From assembly GCA_964057225.1 (NCBI GenBank), contig OZ059895.1, positions 14,818,001 to 14,882,000 on the forward strand: a DNA stretch of 64,000 nt. The letters are read 5' to 3'. A program made the translations under genes and the position numbers. Position 1 is the first letter of the stretch; each line of letters begins with the position of its first letter. Below are positions 13,175 to 26,526 of this stretch, one piece after another. The DNA is from Auanema rhodensis. Lineage: Eukaryota > Animalia > Nematoda. Under the pieces are notes generated by a model. It was not told where the DNA came from. It worked only from the letters and a program-made list of their open reading frames with translations, and searched no databases.

Positions 13175-14278
13175 TCAACTTGGATATGCAGGGAATCGTA
13201 CTTTGCAGAGCGGAGGGGGATGACTGAATTCCAATCCTTTAAATTCGCAAGAAGAACAGAATTTTTTAGTGCCTAGACGGCATCGAGAACCTTTTAACGG
13301 GTGAACTCTGAGACATTCCACGCATATGTTGAGAGATCTACAACGTCTCATGCGATCAACTGCAGTTTTGTAAGTAGGACAGCTGAACATCAGATGGTCG
13401 TTTTGAAGACAGAATTTGCAGGGTGTTCTCATCAGACGGCCAGTAGACCTGTTCACCAATGGCTCTATTTCGTCCAATAGATCCTCGACCATTCCATACA
13501 GTCTTAGCTCCACACGAGACCGTCTTGTATTTTTTTCATTTTTCAGTCGTCTTCTGAGAAAAATTTTGTCCAATATTCGGGCAAAGATTGGATCACAACT
13601 ATATTGCTCTTGGTCTAATTCAGAGAGACGAGTGATAATGCAATTGGAACGGGTTTTCAATTGAGGCAATAACCTCAAGCGCATATCTTTTGCTATACCA
13701 TCGAGATCAGTGATCATTTTCTGGATTTTCTGAGTGTGCTTGGTCTTTAGAGCTGTCATGGATAGTACATCAGCTAGCTTGCTAATGTCATCCTCTTGAA
13801 TATTGCTAATAGGCATAGTAAGTATTTCAGTTGATTCAACAAGTTCTTTCATTTCACTGCTGACACTAAAAATACTTTGTGAATCGAAAAAGGATGAAGT
13901 ATTACCTGTCGATTCATTCTCCTTGCGATATAAAGCTATGCGAGTGAGGACTTCTTTCAACTCATCGACCTCGTCACTTGCGGGTTTGAAGTCAAACGGA
14001 AAATCATAAGATTGCAGTAGTTTAACAATTCTTTTCATATTTCTAGTTTCATCCATAATCAGTTCTCCACATGGAAATATGTCGATATAAGCACATATGG
14101 CTGCATTACGTTTCACAACAATGAATTGTATCCGATCCTCTCGGTCAGTCGGAAAGTCAAAACGGTGCTCCCATTCTTCTGTCGATTCCAGTACAGAGCA
14201 GCACACAACATAAGCTTCGCGAAGTGCAGAGTGATGATAAAGAATAACATCAGCCAGATAATCAGCAGAAATAGTCAT
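13175..14278 (-). CDS. Intronless 367-aa ORF with three C-terminal CCHC zinc knuckles, BEL/Pao Gag-like
   Basis: CKFCLQNDHLMFSC (CX2CX4HX4C), CVECLRVHPLKGSRC, CSSCEFKGLEFSHPPPLC; longest ORF in the window; no introns; no pol or LTR seen nearby. Confidence 0.7.
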   Translation of the reverse strand: MTISADYLADVILYHHSALREAYVVCCSVLESTEEWEHRFDFPTDREDRIQFIVVKRNAAICAYIDIFPCGELIMDETRNMKRIVKLLQSYDFPFDFKPASDEVDELKEVLTRIALYRKENESTGNTSSFFDSQSIFSVSSEMKELVESTEILTMPISNIQEDDISKLADVLSMTALKTKHTQKIQKMITDLDGIAKDMRLRLLPQLKTRSNCIITRLSELDQEQYSCDPIFARILDKIFLRRRLKNEKNTRRSRVELRLYGMVEDLLDEIEPLVNRSTGRLMRTPCKFCLQNDHLMFSCPTYKTAVDRMRRCRSLNICVECLRVHPLKGSRCRLGTKKFCSSCEFKGLEFSHPPPLCKVRFPAYPS

Positions 14279-15088
14279 TATGTACTTTAGGTAGAAGAAT
14301 AATAGAGGGCCAACAACGAATTTAAGGAGAATAGAAGCTTATTGACAGTGTTATCGCCAACAAAGAAGTTTTAAATTTGTGTATGTTAAGCGGTATTTAA
14401 GTACATTCAGAAAGATGAAAATCGATAAATATTTAATGTTTCAGTTGTTTAAAGTTTGATCTAAGGTTATGTTTAAATTATATAAGAAATATCTGAAATT
14501 TAACGATAAACTGCTTGATAAGACTCAAGCAATGTTTTATTTTGTGTGGGAGTACCAGATTGTATTCTTATAAATATGTTGTCTATTATCTATTTTATAT
14601 AGCTGTCGTGTGATCGGTAATTTTAAAAGAACGAATCATCTTTACAAATAAACTACATGATTTCTCAGAATAAAGAAATTACTGTGTAATCTTGAGCTAA
14701 AACGTTTATGATGAACATCTATTCTTTTACTTTCTTTTAAATTCTTTCCTTTAGATTTTTTTTTTACTTTTCTTTAAATTTTTGTTCAAGCAATATACTT
14801 TTAATATTTTATATTCATTACTGTAGTTTAAAAGCGAGTCATGTTAATTTTCAAATTAATAATTGGCGCCAAATGAACAGCATGTTCATTTTTATTGTTT
14901 CAGAAGAGATGAGCGGTTCTTGTATTTTGTTACTTTTCTTTGGGTTGTTCACAATTCAATGTTGATTTCAATTTGTATTCAACCTGTTGGGAGAGGTATT
15001 CACAAATCTAGGCTGCTTTCTGGTTCAGGCTCATATGCAATAGTCATTGTCTAGTGTTGAGAGGCAATCTCTATGTTGGTTAGAGGAA

Positions 15089-15153
15089 GACACAGCACCC
15101 CAATGGGATACGGCACTTCGATTAACGGCACTGGGAGGTGACACTGCATCTTC
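15089..15153 (+). promoter_or_regulatory. Conserved ~65 bp upstream element of SL1 genes (putative PSE/SNAPc promoter), present before all 10 copies
   Basis: Consensus GACACAGCACCCCAATGGGATACGGCGCCCACATTGAAGGCACTGGGAGGTGACACTGCATCTTC at constant distance from +1 while further-upstream spacers differ; position fits nematode snRNA/SL promoters. Confidence 0.65.
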
Positions 15154-15247
15154 GGTTTAATTACCCAAGTTTGAGGTACTTTCCTGATTCAACCAGAATA
15201 ATTCTGTGTTCGAATTAAATTTTGGAACGCTCTCCATTGGAGAGCAA
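15154..15247 (+). ncRNA. sls-1: SL1 spliced-leader RNA, copy 1
   Basis: Exact 22-nt SL1 GGTTTAATTACCCAAGTTTGAG + GT donor, stem II, Sm site AATTTTGG, terminal hairpin GCTCTCC-ATT-GGAGAGC. Confidence 0.97.
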
Positions 15248-15530
15248 CATGAATCGAAAATCGTTAGATGAATCAAATTCCTTTGGTTTTAAAAATTGAA
15301 AATCAAAGAGGGTGATAATAAGTTTGGGAATTGTAGTTGACATGAGCGGTTGTATTCAGGCTGTATGAAAGGTTGTTCTCAAATCTAAGCTCGATGTAGC
15401 CTACGCGTGTGCATGACCCATGGTGTCAAGTCAAGAGAGACGGTCTTTATCAAGTTTGGGGGAGAGACACAGCACCCCAATGGGATACGGCGCCCACATT
15501 GAAGGCACTGGGAGGTGACACTCCATCTTC

Positions 15531-15624
15531 GGTTTAATTACCCAAGTTTGAGGTACTTTCCTGATTCAACCAGATTAATTCTGTGTTCGAATTAAATTTT
15601 GGAACGCTCTCCACCGGAGAGCAA
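15531..15624 (+). ncRNA. sls-1: SL1 RNA, copy 2
   Basis: Same architecture; terminal loop ACC. Confidence 0.97.
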
Positions 15625-15908
15625 CAAGAATCGAAAATCTTTGAATGAATCAAGTTCTTTGGATTTTTAAAATTGAAAAATCAATGAGAACTATAATCAT
15701 TTTAGGAATTGTAGTTAAGATGAGCGGTTGTATTCCGGCTGTATGAAAGGTTGTTCTCAAATCTAAGCTCGATGTAGCCTACGCGTGTGCATGACCCATG
15801 GTGTCAAGTCAAGAGAGACGGTCTTTATCAAGTTTGGGGGAGAGACACAGCACGTCTATGTGATACGACACGTGCATTGATGCCCCTGGGGGGTGACAGT
15901 GCTTCATC

Positions 15909-16002
15909 GGTTTAATTACCCAAGTTTGAGGTACTTTCCTGATTCAACCAGAAACATTCTGTGTTCGAATTAAATTTTGGAACGCTCTCCACTGGAGAGC
16001 AA
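15909..16002 (+). ncRNA. sls-1: SL1 RNA, copy 3 (variant upstream element)
   Basis: Same architecture; stem II loop ACA, terminal loop ACT. Confidence 0.96.
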
Positions 16003-16398
16003 CATGAATCGAAAATCTTTAACAATATACTTAATTTTTTAAAATTCAAAATTGGCGCCAAATATGCAAAACATTAATTTTTGATGTTTTAAAAGAGGTG
16101 ATCGGTTGTATTCAGGCTGTATGAGAGGTTGTTCACAAACCTAAGTTCTAAGTAGCTCAGGCTCATATAATTTAAGAAGATAGCTGTTTATTCCTAAAAT
16201 TTCAGTAGAAAAGAGCGGTTATACACAGGCTCTATGGGAAATTGTCACAAATCTAGGCTGCTTTCTTGTTCAGGCTCTTACCCAGTACTCATTGTCTCGT
16301 GAAGAAAGGCAATCTCTATGTGGGTTAGAGGAAGACATAGCACCCCAATGGGATACGGCGCCTACATTGACGGCACTGGGAGGTGACACTGCAACTTC

Positions 16399-16492
16399 GG
16401 TTTAATTACCCAAGTTTGAGGTACTTTCCTGATTCAACCAGAATAATTCTGTGTTCGAATTAAATTTTGGAACGCTCTCCACCGGAGAGCAA
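16399..16492 (+). ncRNA. sls-1: SL1 RNA, copy 4
   Basis: Same architecture; terminal loop ACC. Confidence 0.97.
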
Positions 16493-17171
16493 CAAGAATC
16501 GAAAATCTTTAACAGTATACTCAATTTTTCAAAATTCAAAATTGGCGCCAAATATGCAAAACATTCATTTTTGATGTTTTAAAAGAGGTGATCGGTTGTA
16601 TTCAGGCTGTATGAGAGGTTGTTCATAAATCTACGTTGCTTCTTGTTTGTAGTCAGATTGTATGGAAAGTATATAAGATTTTCGCAAATCTGTTTGTTAA
16701 CGTTTGTAAATATGAATTGATATTCCTTGTCAATTCCAAAAATTAAGATTTGTTGCCGGAAGAATATTTTTGTTTCGACAGATTGGTTAGTTTGATTATT
16801 GCAAGTTTTTTTTAATATCCTTATGAAATTGATGTTGTAAAGTCACACAATTTGATAAATTTTCATTAATTCTAAAGTTAATATATTCAAGTAATTCCTA
16901 AGTTAAATATAAAAATAGTTCTATATGAAATTAACAGAGTTCATCTAATTTCAAAAATTAGTTCTGATGGTATTTGCCATGTATAGGTAAATATCTTGAT
17001 AAGCAAAACAACAAGTCTTTGCATTCAACATACCATCATTTTAGTTGTCAACTGTGTCTTCGGTAATAATTCGAACAACTTCTCAGTTGTTGGATAATCC
17101 TTAGCATATCCAAGCATATTCCACTCAACTTGGCATCATTTAAAGTTTAGAAGTATGAGCTGTCGATATTT

Positions 17172-18337
17172 CTAAATATTATAAATTATTTGATTGATTT
17201 TTTTTTTAATACTCGGTTTAGCATTCATGAAGAATCCAAATAGAACTCTTCTATATTCTTTGTGTCCAAACAGTACTGTTGCTATATTAGCTATGCCATG
17301 GCAAGAATATGCTAGCAATCCAATAGATCCAATAAGTTTCGAATCAATAAGTACAGCGGATATGAGTGGAACAGACATTAGCAAGGCTGGAACAGTAATC
17401 TGAAGATACATATCGTATGTTATAAAGTTGAAAATTTTAACCGACTTGAAGAAACAGTGCCCATACTAGAGATTTTTGAAGTTTTCGAGTTCGTGCTGAT
17501 AAGTTAGTGGTAGATGAGTACAGCGTTCGTAAACAAACAGCAAATATAAATATCCATAATGCGAAGAGAGCCGTTACACCTATGATATAACTAACAGCTA
17601 GAAACATTTTTTGATTATTAGTTATTATAATAACATCATTATTCATGAGTAAAGGACCATAATTATGCTTACATATGTTATTTTCCTAGAAATACTATAT
17701 GAGAATGTTCAACAACAGATTAAAACTTTTAATTGAATGTAAATAGTTTGAAAAGCAGTTGAAGTTACCATATAAACATAAGCACAAAATATTAACCAAA
17801 AGCTATGTACAACTGCTACTGTCATATAATGACCAAATTTATTGAAATATAATGGATGTGAGTGTGTGATAATAGCTCTGGTTCGAAATATTAACATATG
17901 AGTATACATACTAACAACTTCTATAATGATTCTTATAACTTAAGAGCAACTTGAGCATATTTCATATACCTAAAGACAAGCTTGTTCCCACATAGAAAAG
18001 ATAAATTATAGGAACTTTCAAGCGAGAAGCTAAACCCATCTGACGAAATCCAGTTATAGCTGGATATACATCTAAAGACAAACAAACTCCAATGACAAAA
18101 TCTTGGAGTATAAAGCTTAAAATCATGATTATATGGATTTTAAAAGGAATAATTTGTATAATAAACTAACCATATGAGATGACAAATTAAAAACTTTTTG
18201 TAAGAAGATAATAGAGATGGTGAATAGTAAATTATTATATATAATGATAACATAGATAAAAGAAAGTTTATGGAAAATATTAAATATTGTAAAAATACAT
18301 ATAGGTTCGCATTTCCCATTTCCAATGATATACACAT
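17172..18337 (-). CDS. Serpentine 7TM chemoreceptor, Srh/Sri-like
   Basis: Hydrophobic exons; SPSLLSSYKKFLICHLIW, NLSARTRKLQKSLVWALFLQ/ITVP and TM7 SCHGIANIATVLFGHKEYRR, typical of the Str superfamily (Srh). Confidence 0.82.
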
Positions 18338-19074
18338 AGTTAACAAAAAATGATGAAATAATCAATCAAAATTTAAAATAAGCAAAAACATATGATTGAT
18401 TTTGAATTTCAAGTATTACAAATTTCATCCTTCACGTATTTTTTTCGTATTCATTTTTTGGGCGGAAAAATCAACATTTATGCAAATGTGAAACTTGACA
18501 TACTATTTTTGTTTTTTTGATAAGCTTCAATTATGAATTACAAAAAAGATAACGGGAATTATCACATAATATATAATGCATTTATCAAATATTTTTGTTT
18601 CAATAACATACTAATCATATTAATATATAAGACTGGTACAAAATTTTTCATAACCTCAACAACAACTCTATAATAATACTAATCGTATGTTAATCTATTT
18701 TTAATGAAACGCGTACATTTAAACTGATTGTACAAGAAGTTAAGAAGATTTCACAATGAGATTCATTGGATTTCCAAATTTCAAATATGTGAATCATTTT
18801 TGCAATATAGTGTTCTAGTGATAGCGAACATCATTATAGTTATTCAAATGATAAATGAAAATATTAAAGAAACAAAATAGAAATAATCGTTTAATTCTCG
18901 AAAATGGAAATTTTAATATTTCTTTTGTGTTTTTTTTTGGATAAAAGAATAACAACTACAGTGCATGTACTTATGTGTGTTACTATTTCTTGTATTTAAG
19001 ACGAATATTTTGCGTTATCGATAGACATATCACATCTTTAATTTGAATTTCATATCAAAAATAATATTTTAGAT

Positions 19075-19432
19075 ATGAAATCTGTTATTCTTACTGTTTT
19101 TCTTATTGGCTATGCTATTGCTATTGATACAACCACCATAGAACCTAAGCGTAAGTTTACGCAGTTTTCAACTTATGAATTTTGGTATTCAAGCTGTTTG
19201 CTCTGGGAAAAACACTGAGTGGAGAGAATGTACCAACCTTTGTGGAAAACAACGTTGTGAAGATCTCAAGAGTGTAAGTTAAAAAAATATATCATTGATA
19301 GTGCGATGACAATAGAATGTCGGTTGTTTCTCCCTTCGTTGTGGCCCACCTGCATGTGTTTGTAAAGATGGATACGTTTTCGCTTCCAATGATGCTTCTG
19401 AAGGATGTGTACCTAGAGAAACATGCTTGTAA
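19075..19432 (+). CDS. TIL-domain (trypsin-inhibitor-like) secreted peptide, copy A, 3 exons
   Basis: MKSVILTVFLIGYAIA signal; CSGKNTEWRECTNLCGKQRCEDLKS/NVGCFSLRCGPPACVCKDGYVFASNDASEGCVPRETCL*, the 10-Cys TIL pattern. Confidence 0.9.
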
Positions 19433-19707
19433 TAATATGCAATATAACTATATTTTAATTTTAATTTTCGGCGATTGGTTAGACAGAAGAACAGAAATCC
19501 TCAATAAAATGCTCACTTCGATTATAAAACAATTTAAAATTAAGAGTTCTGATGTTTATATTTAAAATGTGAAAATAAAGATTTTAACATAGCACTAGCA
19601 CTGTCTGGTAAAGAGACGCAATCTCTATGTGCGTTAGAGGCAACCACAGCACCCCAATGGGATACGGCGCCCACATTGAAGGCACTGGGAGGTGACACTG
19701 CATCTTT

Positions 19708-19801
19708 GGTTTAATTACCCAAGTTTGAGGTACTTTCCTGATTCAACCAGAATAATTCTGTGTTCAATTTAAATTTTGGAACGCTCTCCATTGGAGAGCA
19801 A
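19708..19801 (+). ncRNA. sls-1: SL1 RNA, copy 5
   Basis: Exact SL1 exon, GT donor, Sm site, 3' hairpin. Confidence 0.96.
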
Positions 19802-20084
19802 CATGAATCGAAAATCTATAGATAAAGCAGTTCGTTTGATTTTTAAAATTGAAAAATCAATGAGAACTATAATCATTTTAGGAATTGTAGTTGAGATGAG
19901 CGGTTGTATTCCGGCTGTATGAAAGGTTGTTCTCAAATCTAAGCTCGATGTAGCCTACGCGTGTGCATGACCCATGGTGTCAAGTCAAGAGAGACGGTCT
20001 TTATCAAGTTTGGGGGAGAGACACAGCACCCCAATGGGATACGGCGCCCACATTGAACGCACTGGGAGGTGACACTGCATCTTC

Positions 20085-20178
20085 GGTTTAATTACCCAAG
20101 TTTGAGGTACTTTCCTGATTCAACCAGAATAATTCTGTGTTCGAATTAAATTTTGGAACGCTCTCCATTGGAGAGCAA
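20085..20178 (+). ncRNA. sls-1: SL1 RNA, copy 6
   Basis: Exact SL1 exon, GT donor, Sm site, 3' hairpin. Confidence 0.97.
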
Positions 20179-20569
20179 CATGAATCGAAAATCTATAGAT
20201 AAATCAGTTCGTTTGATTTTTAAAATTGAAAAATCAATGAGAACGATAATCATTTTAGGAATTGTAGTTGAGATGAGCGGTTGTATTCAGGCTGAAAGGT
20301 TGTTCTCAAATTTAAGTTCTAAGTAGCTCAGGCTCATATAATTTAAGAAGATAGCTGTTCATTTCTAAAATTTCAGTAGAAAAAAGCGGTTATACACAGG
20401 CTCTATGGGGAAATTGTCACAAATCTAGGCTGCTTTCTTGTTCAGGCTCTTATGCAGTAGTCATTGTCTGGTGAAGAGAGCAATCTCTATGTGGGTTAGA
20501 GGCAGACACAGCACCCCAATGGGATACGGCGCCCACATTGAAGGCACTGGGAGGTGACACTGCATCTTC

Positions 20570-20663
20570 GGTTTAATTACCCAAGTTTGAGGTACTTTCC
20601 TGATTCAACCAGAATAATTCTGTGTTCGAATTAAATTTTGGAACGCTCTCCACTGGAGAGCAA
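20570..20663 (+). ncRNA. sls-1: SL1 RNA, copy 7
   Basis: Exact SL1 exon, GT donor, Sm site, 3' hairpin. Confidence 0.97.
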
Positions 20664-21053
20664 CATGAATCAAATGTCTTTAGATAAATCAGTTCGTTTG
20701 ATTTTTAAAATTGAAAAATCAATGAGAACTATAATCATTTTAGGAATTGTAGTTGAGATGAGCGGTTGTATTCAGGCTGAAAGGTTGTTCTCAAATTTAA
20801 GTTCTAAGTAGCTCAGGCTCATATAATTTAAGAAGATAGCTGTTTATTTCTAAAATTTCAGTAGAAAAGAGCGGTTATACACAGGCTCTATGGGAAATTG
20901 TCACAAATCTAGGCTGCTTTCTTGTTCAGGCTCTTATGCAGTAGTCATTGTCTGGTGAAGAGAGCAATCTCTATGTGGGTTAGAGGCAGACACAGCACCC
21001 CAATGGGATACGGCGCCCACATTGAAGGCACTGGGAGGTGACACTGCATCTTT

Positions 21054-21147
21054 GGTTTAATTACCCAAGTTTGAGGTACTTTCCTGATTCAACCAGAATA
21101 ATTCTGTGTTCAATTTAAATTTTGGAACGCTCTCCATTGGAGAGCAA
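21054..21147 (+). ncRNA. sls-1: SL1 RNA, copy 8
   Basis: Exact SL1 exon, GT donor, Sm site, 3' hairpin. Confidence 0.96.
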
Positions 21148-21537
21148 CATGAATCGAAAATCTATAGATAAAGCAGTTCGTTTGATTTTTAAAATTGAAA
21201 AATCAATGAGAACTATAATCATTTTAGGAATTGTAGTTGAGATGAGCGGTTGTATTCAGGCTGAAAGGTTGTTCTCAAATTTAAGTTCTAAGTAGCTCAG
21301 GCTCATATAATTTAAGAAGATAGCTGTTTATTTCTAAAATTTCAGTAGAAAAGAGCGGTTATACACAGGCTCTATGGGAAATTGTCACAAATCTAGGCTG
21401 CTTTCTTGTTCAGGCTTTTATGCAGTAGTCATTGTCTGGTGAAGAGAGCAATCTCTATGTGGGTTAGAGGCAGACACAGCACCCCAATGGGATACGGCGC
21501 CCACATTGAAGGCACTGGGAGGTGACACTGCATCTTT

Positions 21538-21631
21538 GGTTTAATTACCCAAGTTTGAGGTACTTTCCTGATTCAACCAGAATAATTCTGTGTTCGAATT
21601 AAATTTTGGAACGCTCTCCATTGGAGAGCAA
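21538..21631 (+). ncRNA. sls-1: SL1 RNA, copy 9
   Basis: Exact SL1 exon, GT donor, Sm site, 3' hairpin. Confidence 0.97.
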
Positions 21632-22368
21632 CTTGAATCGAAAATCTTTAACAATATACTTAATTTTTTAAAATTCAAAATTGGCGCCAAATATGCAAAA
21701 CATTCATTTTTGATGTTTCAAAAGAGGTGATCGGTTGTATTCAGGCTGTATGAGAGGTTGTTCACAAACCTAAGTTCTAAGTAGCTCAGGCTCATATAAT
21801 TTAAGAAGATAGCTGTGGCATCAATGCACCTCCTATTCGTTCCGAAATTTATTCGTTCATAGTGAGGAATATTCAAGATAAACATCTTTCTGATTTGGGC
21901 AATTTCAAATTTTTAAAATGAACTCTGTTAATTTCATATAGAACTATTTCTATATTTAACTTAGGAATTACTTGAATATATTAACTTTAGAATTAATGAA
22001 AATTTATCAAATTATGTGACTTTACAACATCTATTTCATAAGGATATTAAAAAAAACTTGCAATAATCAAACTAACCAATCTGTCGAAACAACATATTCT
22101 TCCGGCAACAAATCTTAATTTTTGGAATTGACAAGGAATATCAATTCATATTTACAAACGTTAACAAACAGATTTGCGAAAATCTTATATACTTTCCATA
22201 CAATCTGACTACAAACAAGAAGCAACGTAGATTTATGAACAACCTCTCATACAGCCTCAATACAACCGATCACCTCTTTTAAAACATCAAAAATGAATGT
22301 TTTGCATATTTGGCGCCAATTTTGAATTTTGAAAAATAAAGTCTACTGTTAAAGAATTTCGATTCATG

Positions 22369-22462
22369 TTGCTCTCCAATGGAGAGCGTTCCAAAATTTA
22401 ATTCGAACACAGAATTATTCTGGTTGAATCAGGAAAGTACCTCAAACTTGGGTAATTAAACC
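22369..22462 (-). ncRNA. sls-1: SL1 RNA, copy 10 (inverted)
   Basis: ctcaaacttgggtaattaaacc at 22441-22462 is the reverse complement of SL1; rest of RNA intact. Confidence 0.97.
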
Positions 22463-22741
22463 GAAGATTCAGTGTCACCTCCCAGTGGCATCAATGCACG
22501 TGTCGTATCCCATTGGGGTGCTGTGTCTGCCTCTAACGCACATAGAGATTGCGTCTCTTTACCAGACAGTGCTAGTGCTATGTTAAAATCTTTATTTTCA
22601 CATTTTAAATATAAACATCAGAACTCTTAATTTTAAATTGTTTTATAATCGAAGTGAGCGTCTGATTGTGGATTTCTGTGCTTCTTTTAATTTATCCAAT
22701 CGTCTAAAATTAAAATTAAAATATAGTTATATTGCATATTA

Positions 22742-23099
22742 TTACAAGCAAGTTTCTCTTCGTACACAACCTTCGGAAGCCTCATTAGAAAGGAAAACGT
22801 GCCCTTCTTTACATACACATGCAGGTGGGCCACAACGAAGGGAGAAACAACCGCCAACCTATTATCATTCAACTATTAACCATATATTTCAATAACTTAC
22901 ATTTTTAAAGTTGTCACAACGTTTTTCTCCACAAAGGTTGCTACATTCTCTCCACTCAGTGTTTTTTCCAGAGCAAACAGCTTGAATACCAAAATTCATA
23001 AGTTGAAAACTGCGTAAACTTACGCTTAGGTTCTATGGTGGTTGTATCAATAGCAATAGCATAGCCAATAAGAAAAACAGTAAGAATAACAGATTTCAT
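22742..23099 (-). CDS. TIL-domain secreted peptide, copy B (inverted paralog)
   Basis: Same exon 1; CSGKNTEWRECSNLCGEKRCDNFKN/VGGCFSLRCGPPACVCKEGHVFLSNEASEGCVREETCL*. Confidence 0.9.
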
Positions 23100-23530
23100 A
23101 TCTAAAATATTATTTTTGATATGAAATTCAAATTAAAGATGTGATATGTCTATCGATAACGCAAAATATTCGTCTTAAATACAAGAAATAGTAACACACT
23201 GCAGTTGTTATTCTTTTCTCAAGCCTAACAACTGTTATAAGAACAAAAGAAATTAATTGAAAATAAACGAAATATCAATGAAAATTTCCATTTTCGAGAA
23301 TTAATCGATTATTCGCTCTTGTTTCTTTAATATGAACAATTATATTAGTTAGTGAAGGATTGTTACACTTTGCATTCGAATGAATGCCGCTTATTTCGGA
23401 AAAAAAAGAAAAAAACTATAACGATAGATATCAATAGGTAAACAACTTTTATTTTTTTATACAACAGTCAATCAATCATATAATCTCAACAAATAGAACA
23501 TAACAAATCTAAACTCTTTTGTACTAATAT

Positions 23531-24218
23531 CTAGAAAATTTTCTTGAACCAGCTTGGCCGTTCCTTATTTAATTCTAAAACTCTTTTTCCTTTCAGTACA
23601 CCATCATCAAGAACATCATCCATGAATCTAACGAATACCTATAAAAATAAGAATAAAGCTAACTTTACTAGAAACTTATTCACCGGTTTATCCTGCTTTT
23701 CTCCTTTGTATGGATTATAGTCCATCATTTTCTGTTTGATTTCGTTAGTTAACTCCCGAACCTAGGTGAATACTTACTATCCATTAGAAAAAAGCTTATG
23801 TATACCTTGTTATAACAAGTTCCACAGATGGTGCCAGTTTGATGGAACCCACCACAAGATTTACAAGTTATCAAGTCTTCAGTAGGAGACAATAATCTTG
23901 TGTATGAGAATTTACGAGTTATTTTCTTTGCTGAAATAGTGAGGAACCATATTCAGAAGTCACCTTCTAAATCTTACGTTTACTAGTTCGGAACTTCGGT
24001 ACACCCCAAAGTATTCTACAGTCATTGATTATATTCTCAAGGGAATATGAGTTAGAAGCAGTGATAGGAACAGATGATGTGGTCAAATTCAATGCTGGTG
24101 CTGAACATATCAATATTGATAGAAATACCCAAAAACTATTTTAACCTAGTGGGGGAACTCTTGGAAAACCCAGCAGCTCATCTACAACATATCTAATTTG
24201 TCTAATTGCACGCAACAT
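23531..24218 (-). CDS. mrpl-32: Mitochondrial ribosomal protein L32
   Basis: ILWGVPKFRTSK.KKITRKF...LITCKSCGGFHQTGTICGTCYNKVRELT...ERPSWFKKIF*: bL32m zinc motif and RPSWF tail. Confidence 0.9.
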
Positions 24219-24433
24219 CTGAAAGCTATGTGTAGACTATGTATATAGCATAATAAAGAAGGTTCATAAATAAGTTTTCTGATTTCAACAGATCTTGAAG
24301 AAACAAAACATAAACCACATTGACACGTATATTTACCAAAATACATTTACATTTTTGAGGAAACATTAAAAAGGTTTACGCCCAACGTTAAACCAGTAAT
24401 GCAATAAAATAAAATAAAAAAGAAATAAATTAT

Positions 24434-26526
24434 TTAGAAATCGTCATCGTCATCCTCGGCCATTTCTTTAGCGAATTCAAGCTCCTGAGAAAGAGTAATA
24501 ACAGATATTTACATCAATTCTAATCAAACCTGTTGCTCTCTCTCTCTTTGAGCTTCGATGCTTTCTACCTCAAGCTTATTCTTTGGTGGGAAACGAAGAG
24601 CTTTAACAGCTTGATTGTGAAGTTCCAAGCAATATCTGAATAAATTAATAAACTTTCTGTTAACCCCGAACACTATTATAATTACCTAATTCTGGAATCG
24701 AAGTGATCTAATGGTTCAGTAGTTCTGTACACATCAGCCGTTTCAGAACTGCGCATGTATCTCTCACCATCTTTAGTATCAGAAGTAATGAAAGCGTCAA
24801 TAGCGCCGGTAGCAATGGCTTTAGCAACCTGTATAGAAACAGATGAGAATAATCATAAGCTTTTTAAAACATACCATGTATTCTGTATCAACTTCACTGT
24901 TGATCTGAAGTTTCTTTCCAATATCCTAAAAACATAAAAACTTGAATGAACAATATAGCAAAAACTCACTTTAATGGCAATCTTAGAATAAGCGAGAGAA
25001 ATTTGCTTAACAGCAGTTTTGATCACATTTTGTCTCAATCTTACAATTAAAGTCAATGTCTCATCTGTCTCGAACTGAAAGATTTCGAGCATTATTTTTT
25101 AAACATAAAGTATTCATACAGTTGTTCCATACTGTTCAAGAACTTTATTGAAATGAACAAGATCACCAATACGAACAGCTGAAATGGAGGGTCAGAATTT
25201 ATAAATTAATTCATATACCTTGGGTGAGCTCAAGATAAGGAGCCAAACACTTTCTGTAAATTGGTTGACGGAAAATAGATCTTTCAGGAATTTCTCCTTG
25301 AAGCAACCCGATTACAACAACCCATTTTTGAGCATTTTGTTTAAAACCAATGGCTGCCTCTTGAGGAGCCTTGCGCATAGCCTGGAATGATATCAGTTAA
25401 GCAATTTATGATAAAATTGAGCAACCTGAAGAAAATATCCAGCAGCAGCAGCGTAGTCAAGTTGAAGAGCCTGGATTCTTCCTTGGTAATAGAGATAACG
25501 AGCGAGATCGTTGTTATTGGCATTATCAGGGAATGACACCTAAATATTATCAATTTCACACTGAAATAAACAACAATAGCTTACTTTAGACACAAGCTTA
25601 GCAGCAGATTGGTATTGTTTATTTAATAAATAGCATCGCAACAAAGTGTAGATTAGAGTTGCTTGAGATTCATTCAAACGACGTAAAGTAGCAGTACGAA
25701 GACGAGCATTAAAGTAACTAAATGTTGACAGACTTAGTAATATATTTAAAACATATCGAATACCTGACAAGCTCGTTAAAACGTCCGAGTCTTTCATGAA
25801 TTAAAGCCAAATAGAAGTAGCCTTTAGCTACAATAGCATCAAGAGATCTCTTCTCATTCTGATCGACTTAAAAAAAAGTTTGAATAATCAAGCGTGCTTT
25901 GTGCATACCTCGGCTAATGAGGAGCTCAGCAGCTTCTTTAGCTTCATTCAATTTATTCTGGTCTATCAAATAAACGATTACAAGCAGATTTACATAGAGA
26001 TCAGACTCCACAGAAGAAAACACTCTCTTAGCGGGTCTAGGAGACCTGAAGAATGATAACATTGTAAGAACAAAAGTAAAAACATACTTTGCTGGTTTTG
26101 GATCGACATCCATTTTTTGCTCAGTAGTAGCAGCCAAAGCAGAAGCAGGAGCAGGTACCCATTGCAGAAGAGTATCACGATGAATTACAGTTTGAGTAGA
26201 GTGAGTAGAGAGGAGTTTGTTAAGAACCTATGAGACGATGACAAATGATACAACAATATAACTCATACTTCATTATTCAATTGTTTTCTGGATTGATGCA
26301 GAACCTGTAGCACTCTTCCCATAAAATGAGATTCTCCACGATCAAGAAGAGAGCAGTGCTCACGAAGATCTAAGATTATAAACTGATTAAAATACGAAAA
26401 TTAGTATAATATCATACTCTCAAGAGCAATTGTGTTCAAATCTTTTGGCTGTTCTTCCTTTTCTTTTTGCTCATCAACTTCCATATTTTCAACATTTTGC
26501 ACTTTAGTATTAGCTATAGGTGCCAT
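24434..26526 (-). CDS. rpn-3: 26S proteasome lid subunit RPN3/PSMD3
   Basis: [70 protein letters not shown]. Confidence 0.96.

What the first reader, a model, noticed from the sequence alone, without database searches (positions are those of the whole stretch)
14860..23333. Compact, 5S-free SL1 RNA gene array embedded among housekeeping genes and carrying protein-coding cargo
Seen: ten complete SL1 RNA genes (nine +, one -) in ~377 and ~485 bp units, with no 5S rRNA in any spacer, interleaved with an Srh-like GPCR and two TIL genes, between orc-4 and mrpl-32. Known: C. elegans keeps SL1 in a ~1 kb repeat together with 5S rRNA (rrs-1), although 5S-unlinked SL1 occurs in some other nematodes. 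Inference: this is either the main SL1 locus of a lineage that lost 5S linkage or a dispersed SL1 cluster that amplifies by local recombination and drags neighbouring genes with it.
Basis: partly seen in the sequence, partly recalled or inferred. Interest (0 to 1): 0.8.

Follow-up and report, generated by a model that had tools for sequence, protein, structure and literature searches.

The report
Small 5S-free SL1 spliced-leader gene cluster
Ten intact-looking genes for the nematode SL1 trans-splicing RNA lie here in short tandem repeats with no 5S rRNA gene, but this layout is already known in other nematodes and this is probably a minor cluster beside much larger arrays elsewhere in the same genome.

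Summary
There are ten exact 22-nt SL1 leaders (nine +, one -). Each heads a 95-nt SL1 RNA gene with a GU donor, an Sm site and three stem-loops. Units are 377/378/490 and 377/485/484/484 bp. Four tests found no 5S, whole or relic. An Srh-type GPCR gene and two TIL genes lie between the sub-arrays.

- **Not the main locus.** Contig word depth over the SL1 gene is a few hundred times that of the unique flanks. Depth over the 485-bp spacer is only about 4-12 times. Abundant SL1 copies also carry an upstream flank that is absent from this window. Unchecked scan notes report giant 281-bp SL arrays on other pieces of this genome (s1-384043, s1-383990). The same stretch was also noted as s1-379039.
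- **The TIL gene is not cargo.** The minus-strand TIL next to mrpl-32 is a resident gene. Its order TIL-mrpl-32-rpn-3-hsp-110-RabGAP is collinear with Auanema sp. JU1783. A roughly 1-kb inverted segmental duplication copied TIL together with one SL1 gene.
- **5S-unlinked SL1 is already published** for Oscheius tipulae and Pristionchus pacificus. About 41 of 56 metagenomic SL1 contigs also lack a full 5S gene.

Verdict: real, a new member of a known kind, of modest interest.

The parts
14848..14918 (+). Left edge of the cluster: a degenerate copy of the 'tail' motif that normally follows an SL1 gene (contains TTGGCGCCAA)
   Evidence: Repeat family D5, 76-79% identical to the copies at 16037, 16527 and 21666
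15154..15248 (+). SL1 RNA gene c1 (95 nt)
   Evidence: Exact leader; RF00198 56.7 bits; folds into three stem-loops with an Sm site, z -3.07
15531..15625 (+). SL1 RNA gene c2, preceded by a type-A (377-bp unit) spacer
15909..16003 (+). SL1 RNA gene c3. It has the most divergent promoter, and its loop-2 variant (AC) is the one that dominates genome-wide read depth
   Evidence: The variant at 20130-31 holds 125k of 133k depth in X1
16399..16493 (+). SL1 RNA gene c4
16494..16944 (+). 'Tail': the 3' flank of the first sub-array, repeated in inverted orientation at 21918-22367
   Evidence: Inverted repeats I2 and I9, 95-98% complementary
17175..18361 (-). Srh-type serpentine receptor gene of about 5 exons, single-copy in this window
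   Evidence: Pfam PF10318 on exon fragments, E 1.5e-9, 6.6e-6 and 0.076; low-depth RNA-run contigs at 17767-17923 and 17970-18121
19075..19432 (+). TIL gene, the derived duplicate (3 exons). It lacks the AG acceptor of the last intron used by its paralogue
   Evidence: Alignment with the minus copy; inverted repeat I1, 92%
19708..19802 (+). SL1 RNA gene c5, directly 3' of TIL(+)
20085..20179 (+). SL1 RNA gene c6
20570..20664 (+). SL1 RNA gene c7 (485-bp unit)
21054..21148 (+). SL1 RNA gene c8 (484-bp unit)
21538..21632 (+). SL1 RNA gene c9 (484-bp unit), followed by a partial tail
   Evidence: I4
21431..21537 (+). Example of the roughly 107-bp promoter block shared by all ten genes. About the last 70 nt are nearly invariant, and it probably holds the snRNA-type proximal element
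   Evidence: Alignment A1: the block is conserved even in c5 and c10, whose sequence further upstream is unrelated
21827..21917 (.). Centre of the inverted duplication. It begins with a 13-nt inverted scrap of an SL1 promoter
   Evidence: Read directly from the sequence. Independent contigs of X1 and X9 span 21787-22265 (table 8)
21918..22367 (-). Inverted copy of the tail
   Evidence: I2 and I9
22368..22462 (-). SL1 RNA gene c10, the only minus-strand copy, directly 3' of the resident TIL gene
22609..23107 (-). Resident TIL gene (mRNA; CDS 23099-22643; 4 exons; 109 aa with signal peptide)
   Evidence: Spliced RNA-run contig; translation; Pfam TIL; orthologous position next to mrpl-32 in Auanema
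23534..24236 (-). mrpl-32, the right-hand neighbour and start of the block collinear with Auanema (then rpn-3 at 24.5-26.6 kb and hsp-110 at 26.6-29.6 kb)
   Evidence: Weak L32p match; tblastn 66-78% identity, collinear with L001

Best explanation
This is a genuine secondary cluster of SL1 spliced-leader RNA genes with no 5S rRNA gene in it. Each unit is a small snRNA-type gene. It has a promoter block of about 107 bp and a 95-nt RNA made of the 22-nt leader, a GU donor, stem-loop 2, the Sm site AAUUUUGG and stem-loop 3. A short conserved box lies just downstream of the RNA's 3' end. By analogy with C. elegans SL1, the RNA would be made by RNA polymerase II, bound by Sm proteins, and would donate its leader to pre-mRNAs in trans-splicing (inferred, not shown here). 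The cluster grew by local recombination. An ancestral unit of about 377 bp diverged into two spacer types. One type gained a partial internal duplication of about 108 bp, giving the 485-bp unit, and was then amplified in tandem (c7-c9 are nearly identical). A block of about 1 kb holding the resident TIL gene plus one SL1 gene was duplicated in inverted orientation. Gene conversion then kept the ends of the copies alike. The bulk of the genome's SL1-like genes lies elsewhere, in much larger arrays.
For: - **Gene anatomy.** There are ten exact leaders against 0 expected, all full-length RF00198 matches at E about 1e-7, and the RNA folds into three stem-loops with an Sm site, z -3.07.
- **Constraint.** The 95-nt genes differ at only 0-5 positions, and the first 51 nt are invariant. 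The promoter blocks differ at up to 36 of 107 positions and the 3' flanks at up to 24 of 55.
- **Repeat map.** Both the tandem and the inverted duplications are mapped.
- **Assembly junctions.** The junction at 21787-22265 and the TIL(-)/c10 junction are present in independent short-read assemblies from other samples (table 8).
- **Depth.** SL1-gene bins reach 82k-192k word depth in X1 against 200-700 for unique flanks, with the same pattern in X8 and X9. Pure type-B spacer bins reach only 2.2k-2.4k, about the assembled copy number.
- **A foreign flank.** A distinct upstream flank recurs in X1, X8 and X9 contigs and is absent from the window.
- **Synteny.** TIL-mrpl-32-rpn-3-hsp-110-RabGAP is collinear with Auanema sp. 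JU1783.
- **Gene conversion.** The two TIL copies are mosaic, with identical ends and a middle that is 15-20% diverged.
Against: - No direct evidence of transcription of any copy. The poly(A)-type RNA run shows no contig over the SL1 genes, though that is expected for a 95-nt non-polyadenylated RNA.
- The depth figures are summed contig word depths. The tool itself warns that these are not copy numbers.
- The tandem copy number in the assembly could not be checked with long reads.
- The giant arrays elsewhere are known to me only from unchecked notes.
- All ten genes score below Rfam's gathering threshold.
Confidence: 0.78

Rival explanations
1. This is the main SL1 locus of the genome, collapsed to ten copies by the assembler. 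The lineage keeps its SL1 supply here, unlinked from 5S.
For: SL1-gene word depth far exceeds ten copies. One bin that mixes type-A spacer and promoter (19864-20060) is also very deep in X1.
Against: Bins made only of type-B spacer sit at about 4-12 times single-copy depth, which matches the assembled copies. The abundant SL1 contigs carry an upstream flank with no match in the window at up to 3 mismatches. Their loop variant matches only c3. Scan notes place giant SL arrays on other pieces of the genome.
Confidence: 0.08
2. The cluster is a silent relic. The copies were seeded from the large arrays, are no longer transcribed, and look intact only because gene conversion from active arrays keeps refreshing them.
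For: No transcription evidence was obtained. c3 resembles the abundant genome-wide type, which suggests exchange between loci.
Against: All ten keep leader, donor, Sm site and stems, and the variable positions fall mainly in loops. The promoter core is retained in every copy, including c5 and c10, whose distal upstream sequence was replaced. Flanks have diverged by up to 30% without a single disabling change in a gene.
Confidence: 0.1
3. The block is an assembly artefact: a chimeric join of repeats that do not lie together in the genome.
For: Tandem and inverted repeats are hard to assemble, and a low-depth odd joint (19737 to 22434) appears in one run.
Against: Contigs from independent samples and studies cover the unique-to-repeat junctions. 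These are 21787-22265 in X1 and X9, 22508-22750 in X8, 19047-19468 in X9, and a 21.6-kb X8 contig running out of 23170-23400 (table 8). Runs from three differently labelled organism codes hold 63-79% of the sampled words.
Confidence: 0.04

Closest known systems
C. elegans 5S-SL1 tandem repeat (about 110 copies of a 1-kb unit on one chromosome)
   Same: The 22-nt leader is the same. The RNA architecture is the same (donor, Sm site, three stem-loops), and the genes are likewise organised in tandem repeats.
   Different: There is no 5S gene or 5S relic in any spacer. Units are 377-490 bp rather than about 1 kb. There are ten copies rather than about 110, and they are interrupted by protein-coding genes with one copy inverted. 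The C. elegans layout is as cited in PMC4138322 and PMC8022731.
Oscheius tipulae and Pristionchus pacificus SL1 loci (5S-unlinked)
   Same: SL1 genes are not next to 5S genes. In O. tipulae the 5S and SL1 genes are 'not clustered' (PMC8022731). In P. pacificus the 187 or more SL1 loci are neither on one chromosome nor near 5S (PMC4138322), and later counts reach at least 619 genes (PMC7986045).
   Different: Here the genes still form short tandem arrays with two defined unit types. According to unchecked notes they coexist with giant compact SL arrays elsewhere in the genome.
SL1-bearing contigs of unidentified nematodes in metagenomes
   Same: Of 56 contigs with the SL1 leader and donor, about 41 have no full 5S gene. 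These include tandem units of about 990 bp.
   Different: Eleven of those contigs keep the first 25-26 nt of 5S about 100-130 nt upstream of SL1. Others have composite 5S-U2-SL1-U6 units. The window has neither feature.
C. elegans SL2-type (sls-2) genes
   Same: Both are small groups of spliced-leader RNA genes scattered among ordinary protein-coding genes (from my own knowledge of the C. elegans genome; not tested here).
   Different: The leader here is canonical SL1, not an SL2-type leader.

Membership tests
Nematode SL1 RNA (Rfam RF00198) | 22-nt leader GGUUUAAUUACCCAAGUUUGAG at the 5' end, followed by a GU splice donor | tested here: met
   Ten exact matches, each followed by GTA
Nematode SL1 RNA (Rfam RF00198) | Sm-binding site (AAUUUUGG) between the second and third stem-loops, in a three-stem-loop fold | tested here: met
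   Minimum-free-energy and centroid folds, z -3.07; the CM alignment covers model positions 1-103
Nematode SL1 RNA (Rfam RF00198) | Score at or above the curated gathering threshold (75 bits) | tested here: not met
   54-57 bits at E 5e-8 to 2e-7. The shortfall comes from a shorter, divergent stem-loop 2 and from mismatches in the model's stem 1, not from a missing element
Nematode SL1 RNA (Rfam RF00198) | The RNA is transcribed and its leader is trans-spliced onto mRNAs | tested here: inconclusive
   There is no RNA contig over the genes. The TIL mRNA contig runs 6 nt past the acceptor AG with one mismatch plus 4 loose letters. That is what a canonical ...UUUGAG leader would give, but I could not read the letters
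5S-SL1 linked repeat (C. elegans type) | A 5S rRNA gene inside each SL1 repeat unit | tested here: not met
   No 5S by Rfam, by blastn, or by local alignment against shuffled sequence
5S-unlinked SL1 loci (O. tipulae / P. pacificus type) | SL1 genes with no 5S gene in the neighbourhood | tested here: met
   No 5S anywhere in the 64-kb window
Main (high-copy) SL1 array of a genome | Holds most of the genome's SL1 gene copies | tested here: not met
   The window holds ten copies, while word depth implies on the order of hundreds, and the abundant copies have a flank that is absent here. This is semi-quantitative only

The most novel reading that the evidence does not exclude
The genome keeps two kinds of SL1 gene in separate places. 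Giant compact arrays would encode a variant leader, and this small cluster would be the only source of the canonical 22-nt SL1. The cluster would have been seeded ectopically next to a conserved TIL-mrpl-32 block, at a break in synteny with Auanema. It would still exchange sequence with the big arrays, since c3 carries their loop and promoter variants. That would make the lineage a natural experiment on how spliced-leader arrays move, lose their 5S partner and diversify their leaders.
Probability: 0.12. Interest if true: 0.55.

Novelty: new member of a known kind. Interest (0 to 1): 0.3.

Why it matters
SL1 supplies the 5' end of most nematode mRNAs, so where its genes sit and how their copy number is maintained matters for genome annotation and for understanding concerted evolution of small-RNA genes. 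This cluster is a clean small example of an SL1 array decoupled from 5S. It shows the recombination steps that build such arrays: unit divergence, partial internal duplication, tandem amplification, inverted segmental duplication and gene conversion. It also carries a practical warning. All ten genes fall below Rfam's gathering score, so default annotation pipelines would miss them. The arrangement itself is already documented in other rhabditids, so it is not a surprise to specialists.

Tried and rejected
- **Divergent 5S or 5S relic in the spacers: rejected.** Rfam at E<=10, blastn with word size 9 using three nematode 5S queries, and Smith-Waterman alignment against shuffled sequence all gave nothing. 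An apparent by-eye resemblance between the promoter and 5S nt 3-30 scored no better than shuffles.
- **Other small RNAs in the spacers.** Only noise-level Rfam matches appeared (snoZ157 at 21 bits, U2 at 19.5 bits).
- **Organism identity.** Run and organism names are coded. An exact look-up of the Gag-like ORF found nothing. Protein searches place the window nearest to Auanema sp. JU1783, at only 48-66% identity for the two proteins tried.
- **SL1 beside TIL in Auanema.** No SL1 lies in the readable part of L001. However, 5.2 kb of the 8.9 kb beyond TIL are runs of N, so absence is not established.
- **Exact search for this lineage's SL1 intron part in metagenome contigs.** No hits.
- **Which leader sits on the TIL mRNA.** I tried to fetch transcript contigs of the spliced TIL protein. 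The look-up of encoding contigs turned the look-up away, and I did not try it by another route.
- **orc-4 by Pfam on single exons.** Nothing beyond generic AAA matches; only a weak ORC4 hit in the PDB.
Full report

Yes. The 22-nt SL1 leader occurs exactly ten times in the 64-kb window, nine times on the + strand and once on the - strand. None is expected by chance.

Each leader heads a 95-nt stretch that aligns end to end (model positions 1-103) with Rfam SL1 (RF00198) at 54-57 bits and E about 1e-7. These scores are below the family's gathering score of 75. A default scan therefore returns nothing for the whole window.

The RNA folds into the expected three stem-loops, with AAUUUUGG single-stranded between the second and third (-26.4 kcal/mol, z -3.07).

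Start-to-start spacings are 377, 378 and 490 bp in the first sub-array and 377, 485, 484 and 484 bp in the second.

**2. Is it 5S-free?**

Yes, by four tests:
- no 5S at Rfam gathering anywhere in the window;
- none at E<=10 within 14000-24500;
- no blastn hit (word size 9, E<=1e-3) with three nematode 5S genes taken from metagenome contigs;
- local alignment of a 5S gene to the 250 nt upstream of four of the copies (c3, c6, c9, c10) scores no better than shuffled sequence.

**3. Anatomy of the units**

The alignment of the ten copies from -200 to +150 shows the following.
- **RNA genes.** They differ at only 0-5 of 95 positions and form six haplotypes. The first 51 nt are invariant. Changes fall in the loops of stem-loops 2 and 3 and at the base of stem 2.
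- **Promoter.** A block of about 107 nt upstream is shared by all ten, and its last 70 nt or so are nearly invariant. It is kept even in c5 and c10, whose sequence further upstream is the 3' end of a TIL gene. This delimits the promoter. Even so, promoter blocks differ at up to 36 of 107 positions.
- **3' flank.** A short box just downstream of the RNA's 3' end is conserved. Across the 55-nt flank the copies differ at up to 24 positions.
- **Constraint.** The RNA segment is therefore under much stronger constraint, or more frequent conversion, than its surroundings.
- **Spacer types.** Type A belongs to the 377-bp units and type B to the 485-bp units. They are homologous but only about 60-70% alike over -200 to -70. 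The 485-bp unit carries an extra partial copy, about 108 bp, of the upstream region. Units c7-c9 are nearly identical, which points to recent tandem amplification.

**4. The protein-coding genes**

Between the sub-arrays lies a minus-strand gene whose exons match Pfam 7TM_GPCR_Srh (E 1.5e-9, 6.6e-6 and 0.076). Two low-depth RNA-run contigs lie over its exons.

There are two TIL genes, at 19075-19432 (+) and 23099-22643 (-) (PF01826, E 6e-6). A 376-nt contig from an RNA run shows the minus copy spliced at three 42-43-bp GT..AG introns.

The two TIL copies are mosaic. Exon 1, intron 1 and the 3' end are identical. The 3' half of exon 2, intron 2 and exon 3 are 15-20% diverged. Because the intron is as diverged as the exons, this points to an old duplication whose ends have been homogenised by gene conversion, not to selection on the protein. 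The plus copy has CG in place of the AG acceptor of the last intron, so the two proteins should end differently.

**5. How the block was built**

The repeat map and the sequence itself give this order:

> tail remnant - c1 - c2 - c3 - c4 - full tail - GPCR(-) - TIL(+) - c5 ... c9 - partial tail | 91-bp junction | full tail (inverted) - c10(-) - TIL(-) - mrpl-32(-)

The module TIL-SL1 (about 18860-19820) is inverted at about 23340-22350 (92-94%). The tail 16290-16944 is inverted at 21918-22571 (95-98%). The junction begins with a 13-nt inverted scrap of an SL1 promoter. Another note of the scan described this same permuted inverted duplication (s1-379039), and I confirm it.

**6. Which TIL copy is the original?**

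The nearest relative in the protein database is Auanema sp. JU1783 (TIL 48% identical, a galectin from 57 kb of the window 66% identical).

Its TIL gene lies in a locus (L001) with RabGAP, HSP110 and rpn-3. tblastn shows that window 22.7-32.4 kb is collinear with L001 10.36-0.4 kb, including an uncalled mrpl-32. The minus-strand TIL next to mrpl-32 is therefore an ancestral resident, and the plus copy is the derived one. 'Cargo' is the wrong word.

Nothing from window 1-19 kb (orc-4 side, Gag-like ORF, GPCR) matches the 10 kb beyond TIL in Auanema. No SL1 or other Rfam family is found there either. However, 5.2 kb of that stretch are runs of N. Absence of SL1 beside TIL in Auanema is therefore not established.

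**7. Main locus or minor locus?**

I laid Logan contigs of three DNA runs (three organism codes, three studies) and one RNA run on 17500-23400. Word depths for the three DNA runs:

| Region | X1 | X8 | X9 |
|---|---|---|---|
| Unique sequence | about 200-700 | 60-200 | 10-26 |
| Bins over SL1 genes | 82,000-192,000 | 4,500-44,000 | up to 20,000 |
| Bins made only of type-B spacer (20849-21045, 21243-21439) | 2,259 and 2,430 | 290-350 | 37-166 |

The spacer bins are roughly 4-12 times the unique depth, in line with the four or five assembled copies. The tool warns that summed word depth is not a copy number, so I take only the order of magnitude. SL1-like genes number in the hundreds, and this cluster's own spacers do not.

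Two further points support this:
- Many contigs match the SL1 gene but diverge just upstream into a flank (...TTGCCTTGGGGTATTCA...) that recurs in X1, X8 and X9. It has no match in the window at up to 3 mismatches.
- The deepest variants (AC at 20130-31 with 125k of 133k in X1, and the -6/-7 variants at 22468-69) are those of c3, the copy with the most divergent promoter.

I infer that c3 resembles the abundant family elsewhere and may reflect exchange between loci. This is inference only.

Unchecked notes of the scan report a 39-kb array of 281-bp SL units with a variant leader, and a whole 64-kb window of compact SL genes, on other pieces of this genome (s1-384043, s1-384072, s1-383990). They also report 5S arrays linked to U4 or U2 instead (s1-378863, s1-379223). 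My depth data agree with large arrays elsewhere. I could not test the leader variant.

**8. Is the assembly sound here?**

Independent contigs cover the diagnostic junctions (table 8):
- 21787-22265 in X1 and X9;
- 22508-22750 (c10 promoter into the TIL 3' end) in X8;
- 19047-19468 in X9;
- a 21.6-kb X8 contig leaving 23170-23400 towards mrpl-32.

The tandem copy number cannot be verified without long reads.

**9. Flanking genes**

- rpn-3/PSMD3 (E 1e-14) and an HSP70-family gene (E 2e-21) are clear.
- mrpl-32 is supported by a weak L32p match plus synteny.
- orc-4 rests on a Walker-A exon whose best PDB matches are ORC4 (E 9e-4). Pfam on the other exons gave nothing.

**10. Comparison with what is known**

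The C. elegans arrangement is about 110 SL1 genes in a 1-kb repeat with 5S (cited in PMC4138322). C. briggsae SL1 is also 5S-linked (PMC7986045).

[quoted passage not shown] It is also absent in P. pacificus, where 187 SL1 loci are neither clustered on one chromosome nor near 5S (PMC4138322), and a later count reaches at least 619 genes (PMC7986045).

As an independent background I fetched 56 metagenome contigs carrying the leader plus donor. By Rfam and blastn:
- 15 carry a full or contig-truncated 5S;
- 11 carry only the first 25-26 nt of 5S about 100-130 nt upstream of SL1;
- 30 carry none, although most of these contigs are only about 1 kb long.

Four contigs have composite 5S-U2-SL1 units, two of which also carry U6. 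5S-free SL1 is therefore common.

**11. Verdict**

The thing is a real, probably functional, secondary SL1 gene cluster built by tandem and inverted duplication around resident genes. It is not the main SL1 locus, and its 5S-free state is a known condition in rhabditids. Transcription and leader use remain untested.

Interest is modest (0.3), and the novelty class is a new member of a known kind.

Noticed in passing
window 13175-14278 (-): An intact 367-aa ORF lies immediately left of the cluster. Another note calls it BEL/Pao Gag-like. Pfam gives only sub-threshold hits (zf-CCHC_3 E 0.05), and the exact protein is not on record.
   Followed up: partly
window 19075-19432 (+) versus 23099-22643 (-): The two TIL paralogues are mosaic, with identical ends and a middle (exon 2 to exon 3, intron included) that is 15-20% diverged. 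The plus copy has lost the AG acceptor of the last intron, so its protein should stop at ...RETCL. The minus copy's mRNA splices over that stop and adds 20 more residues.
   Followed up: partly
window 14862, 16051, 16541, 21680 and 22310 (approximate): A palindrome, TTGGCGCCAA, lies about 50 nt downstream of the SL1 3' end, but only in the 'tail'-type flanks (c3, c4, c9, c10 and the left-edge remnant). From memory it resembles an E2F-type site.
   Followed up: no
L013, L014, L020, L021, L032, L034, L039, L042, L044, L047, L051 (metagenome contigs): In these SL1 contigs of unidentified nematodes, some with tandem units of about 990 bp, only the first 25-26 nt of 5S rRNA are present. They lie about 100-130 nt upstream of SL1 on the same strand. 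Rfam calls no 5S in the four of them that I scanned (L021, L032, L042, L044). A 119-nt 5S would just fit in the gap before SL1. This may be a 5S relic reused in the SL1 upstream region.
   Followed up: partly
L007, L009, L024, L031 (metagenome contigs): Composite small-RNA repeat units that hold 5S, U2 and SL1 together; L007 and L009 also carry U6.
   Followed up: no
L001 11298-14075, 15061-17241 and 18130-18376 (Auanema sp. JU1783): Long runs of N lie directly downstream of the TIL orthologue. A repeat that the assembler could not resolve may sit exactly where the window has its SL1 cluster.
   Followed up: no
window 19074-19474: One contig in X1 (depth 255, about one haplotype) and one in X9 join 19074 to 19474, skipping the whole plus-strand TIL gene. 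They also carry a run of variants at 19508-19551. This may be an allele or paralogue without the duplicate TIL, or with a very divergent one.
   Followed up: no
window 15154-22462 (all ten SL1 genes): RF00198's gathering score (75 bits) excludes every SL1 gene of this genome (54-57 bits). Rfam-based annotation at default settings would report no SL1 here.
   Followed up: yes
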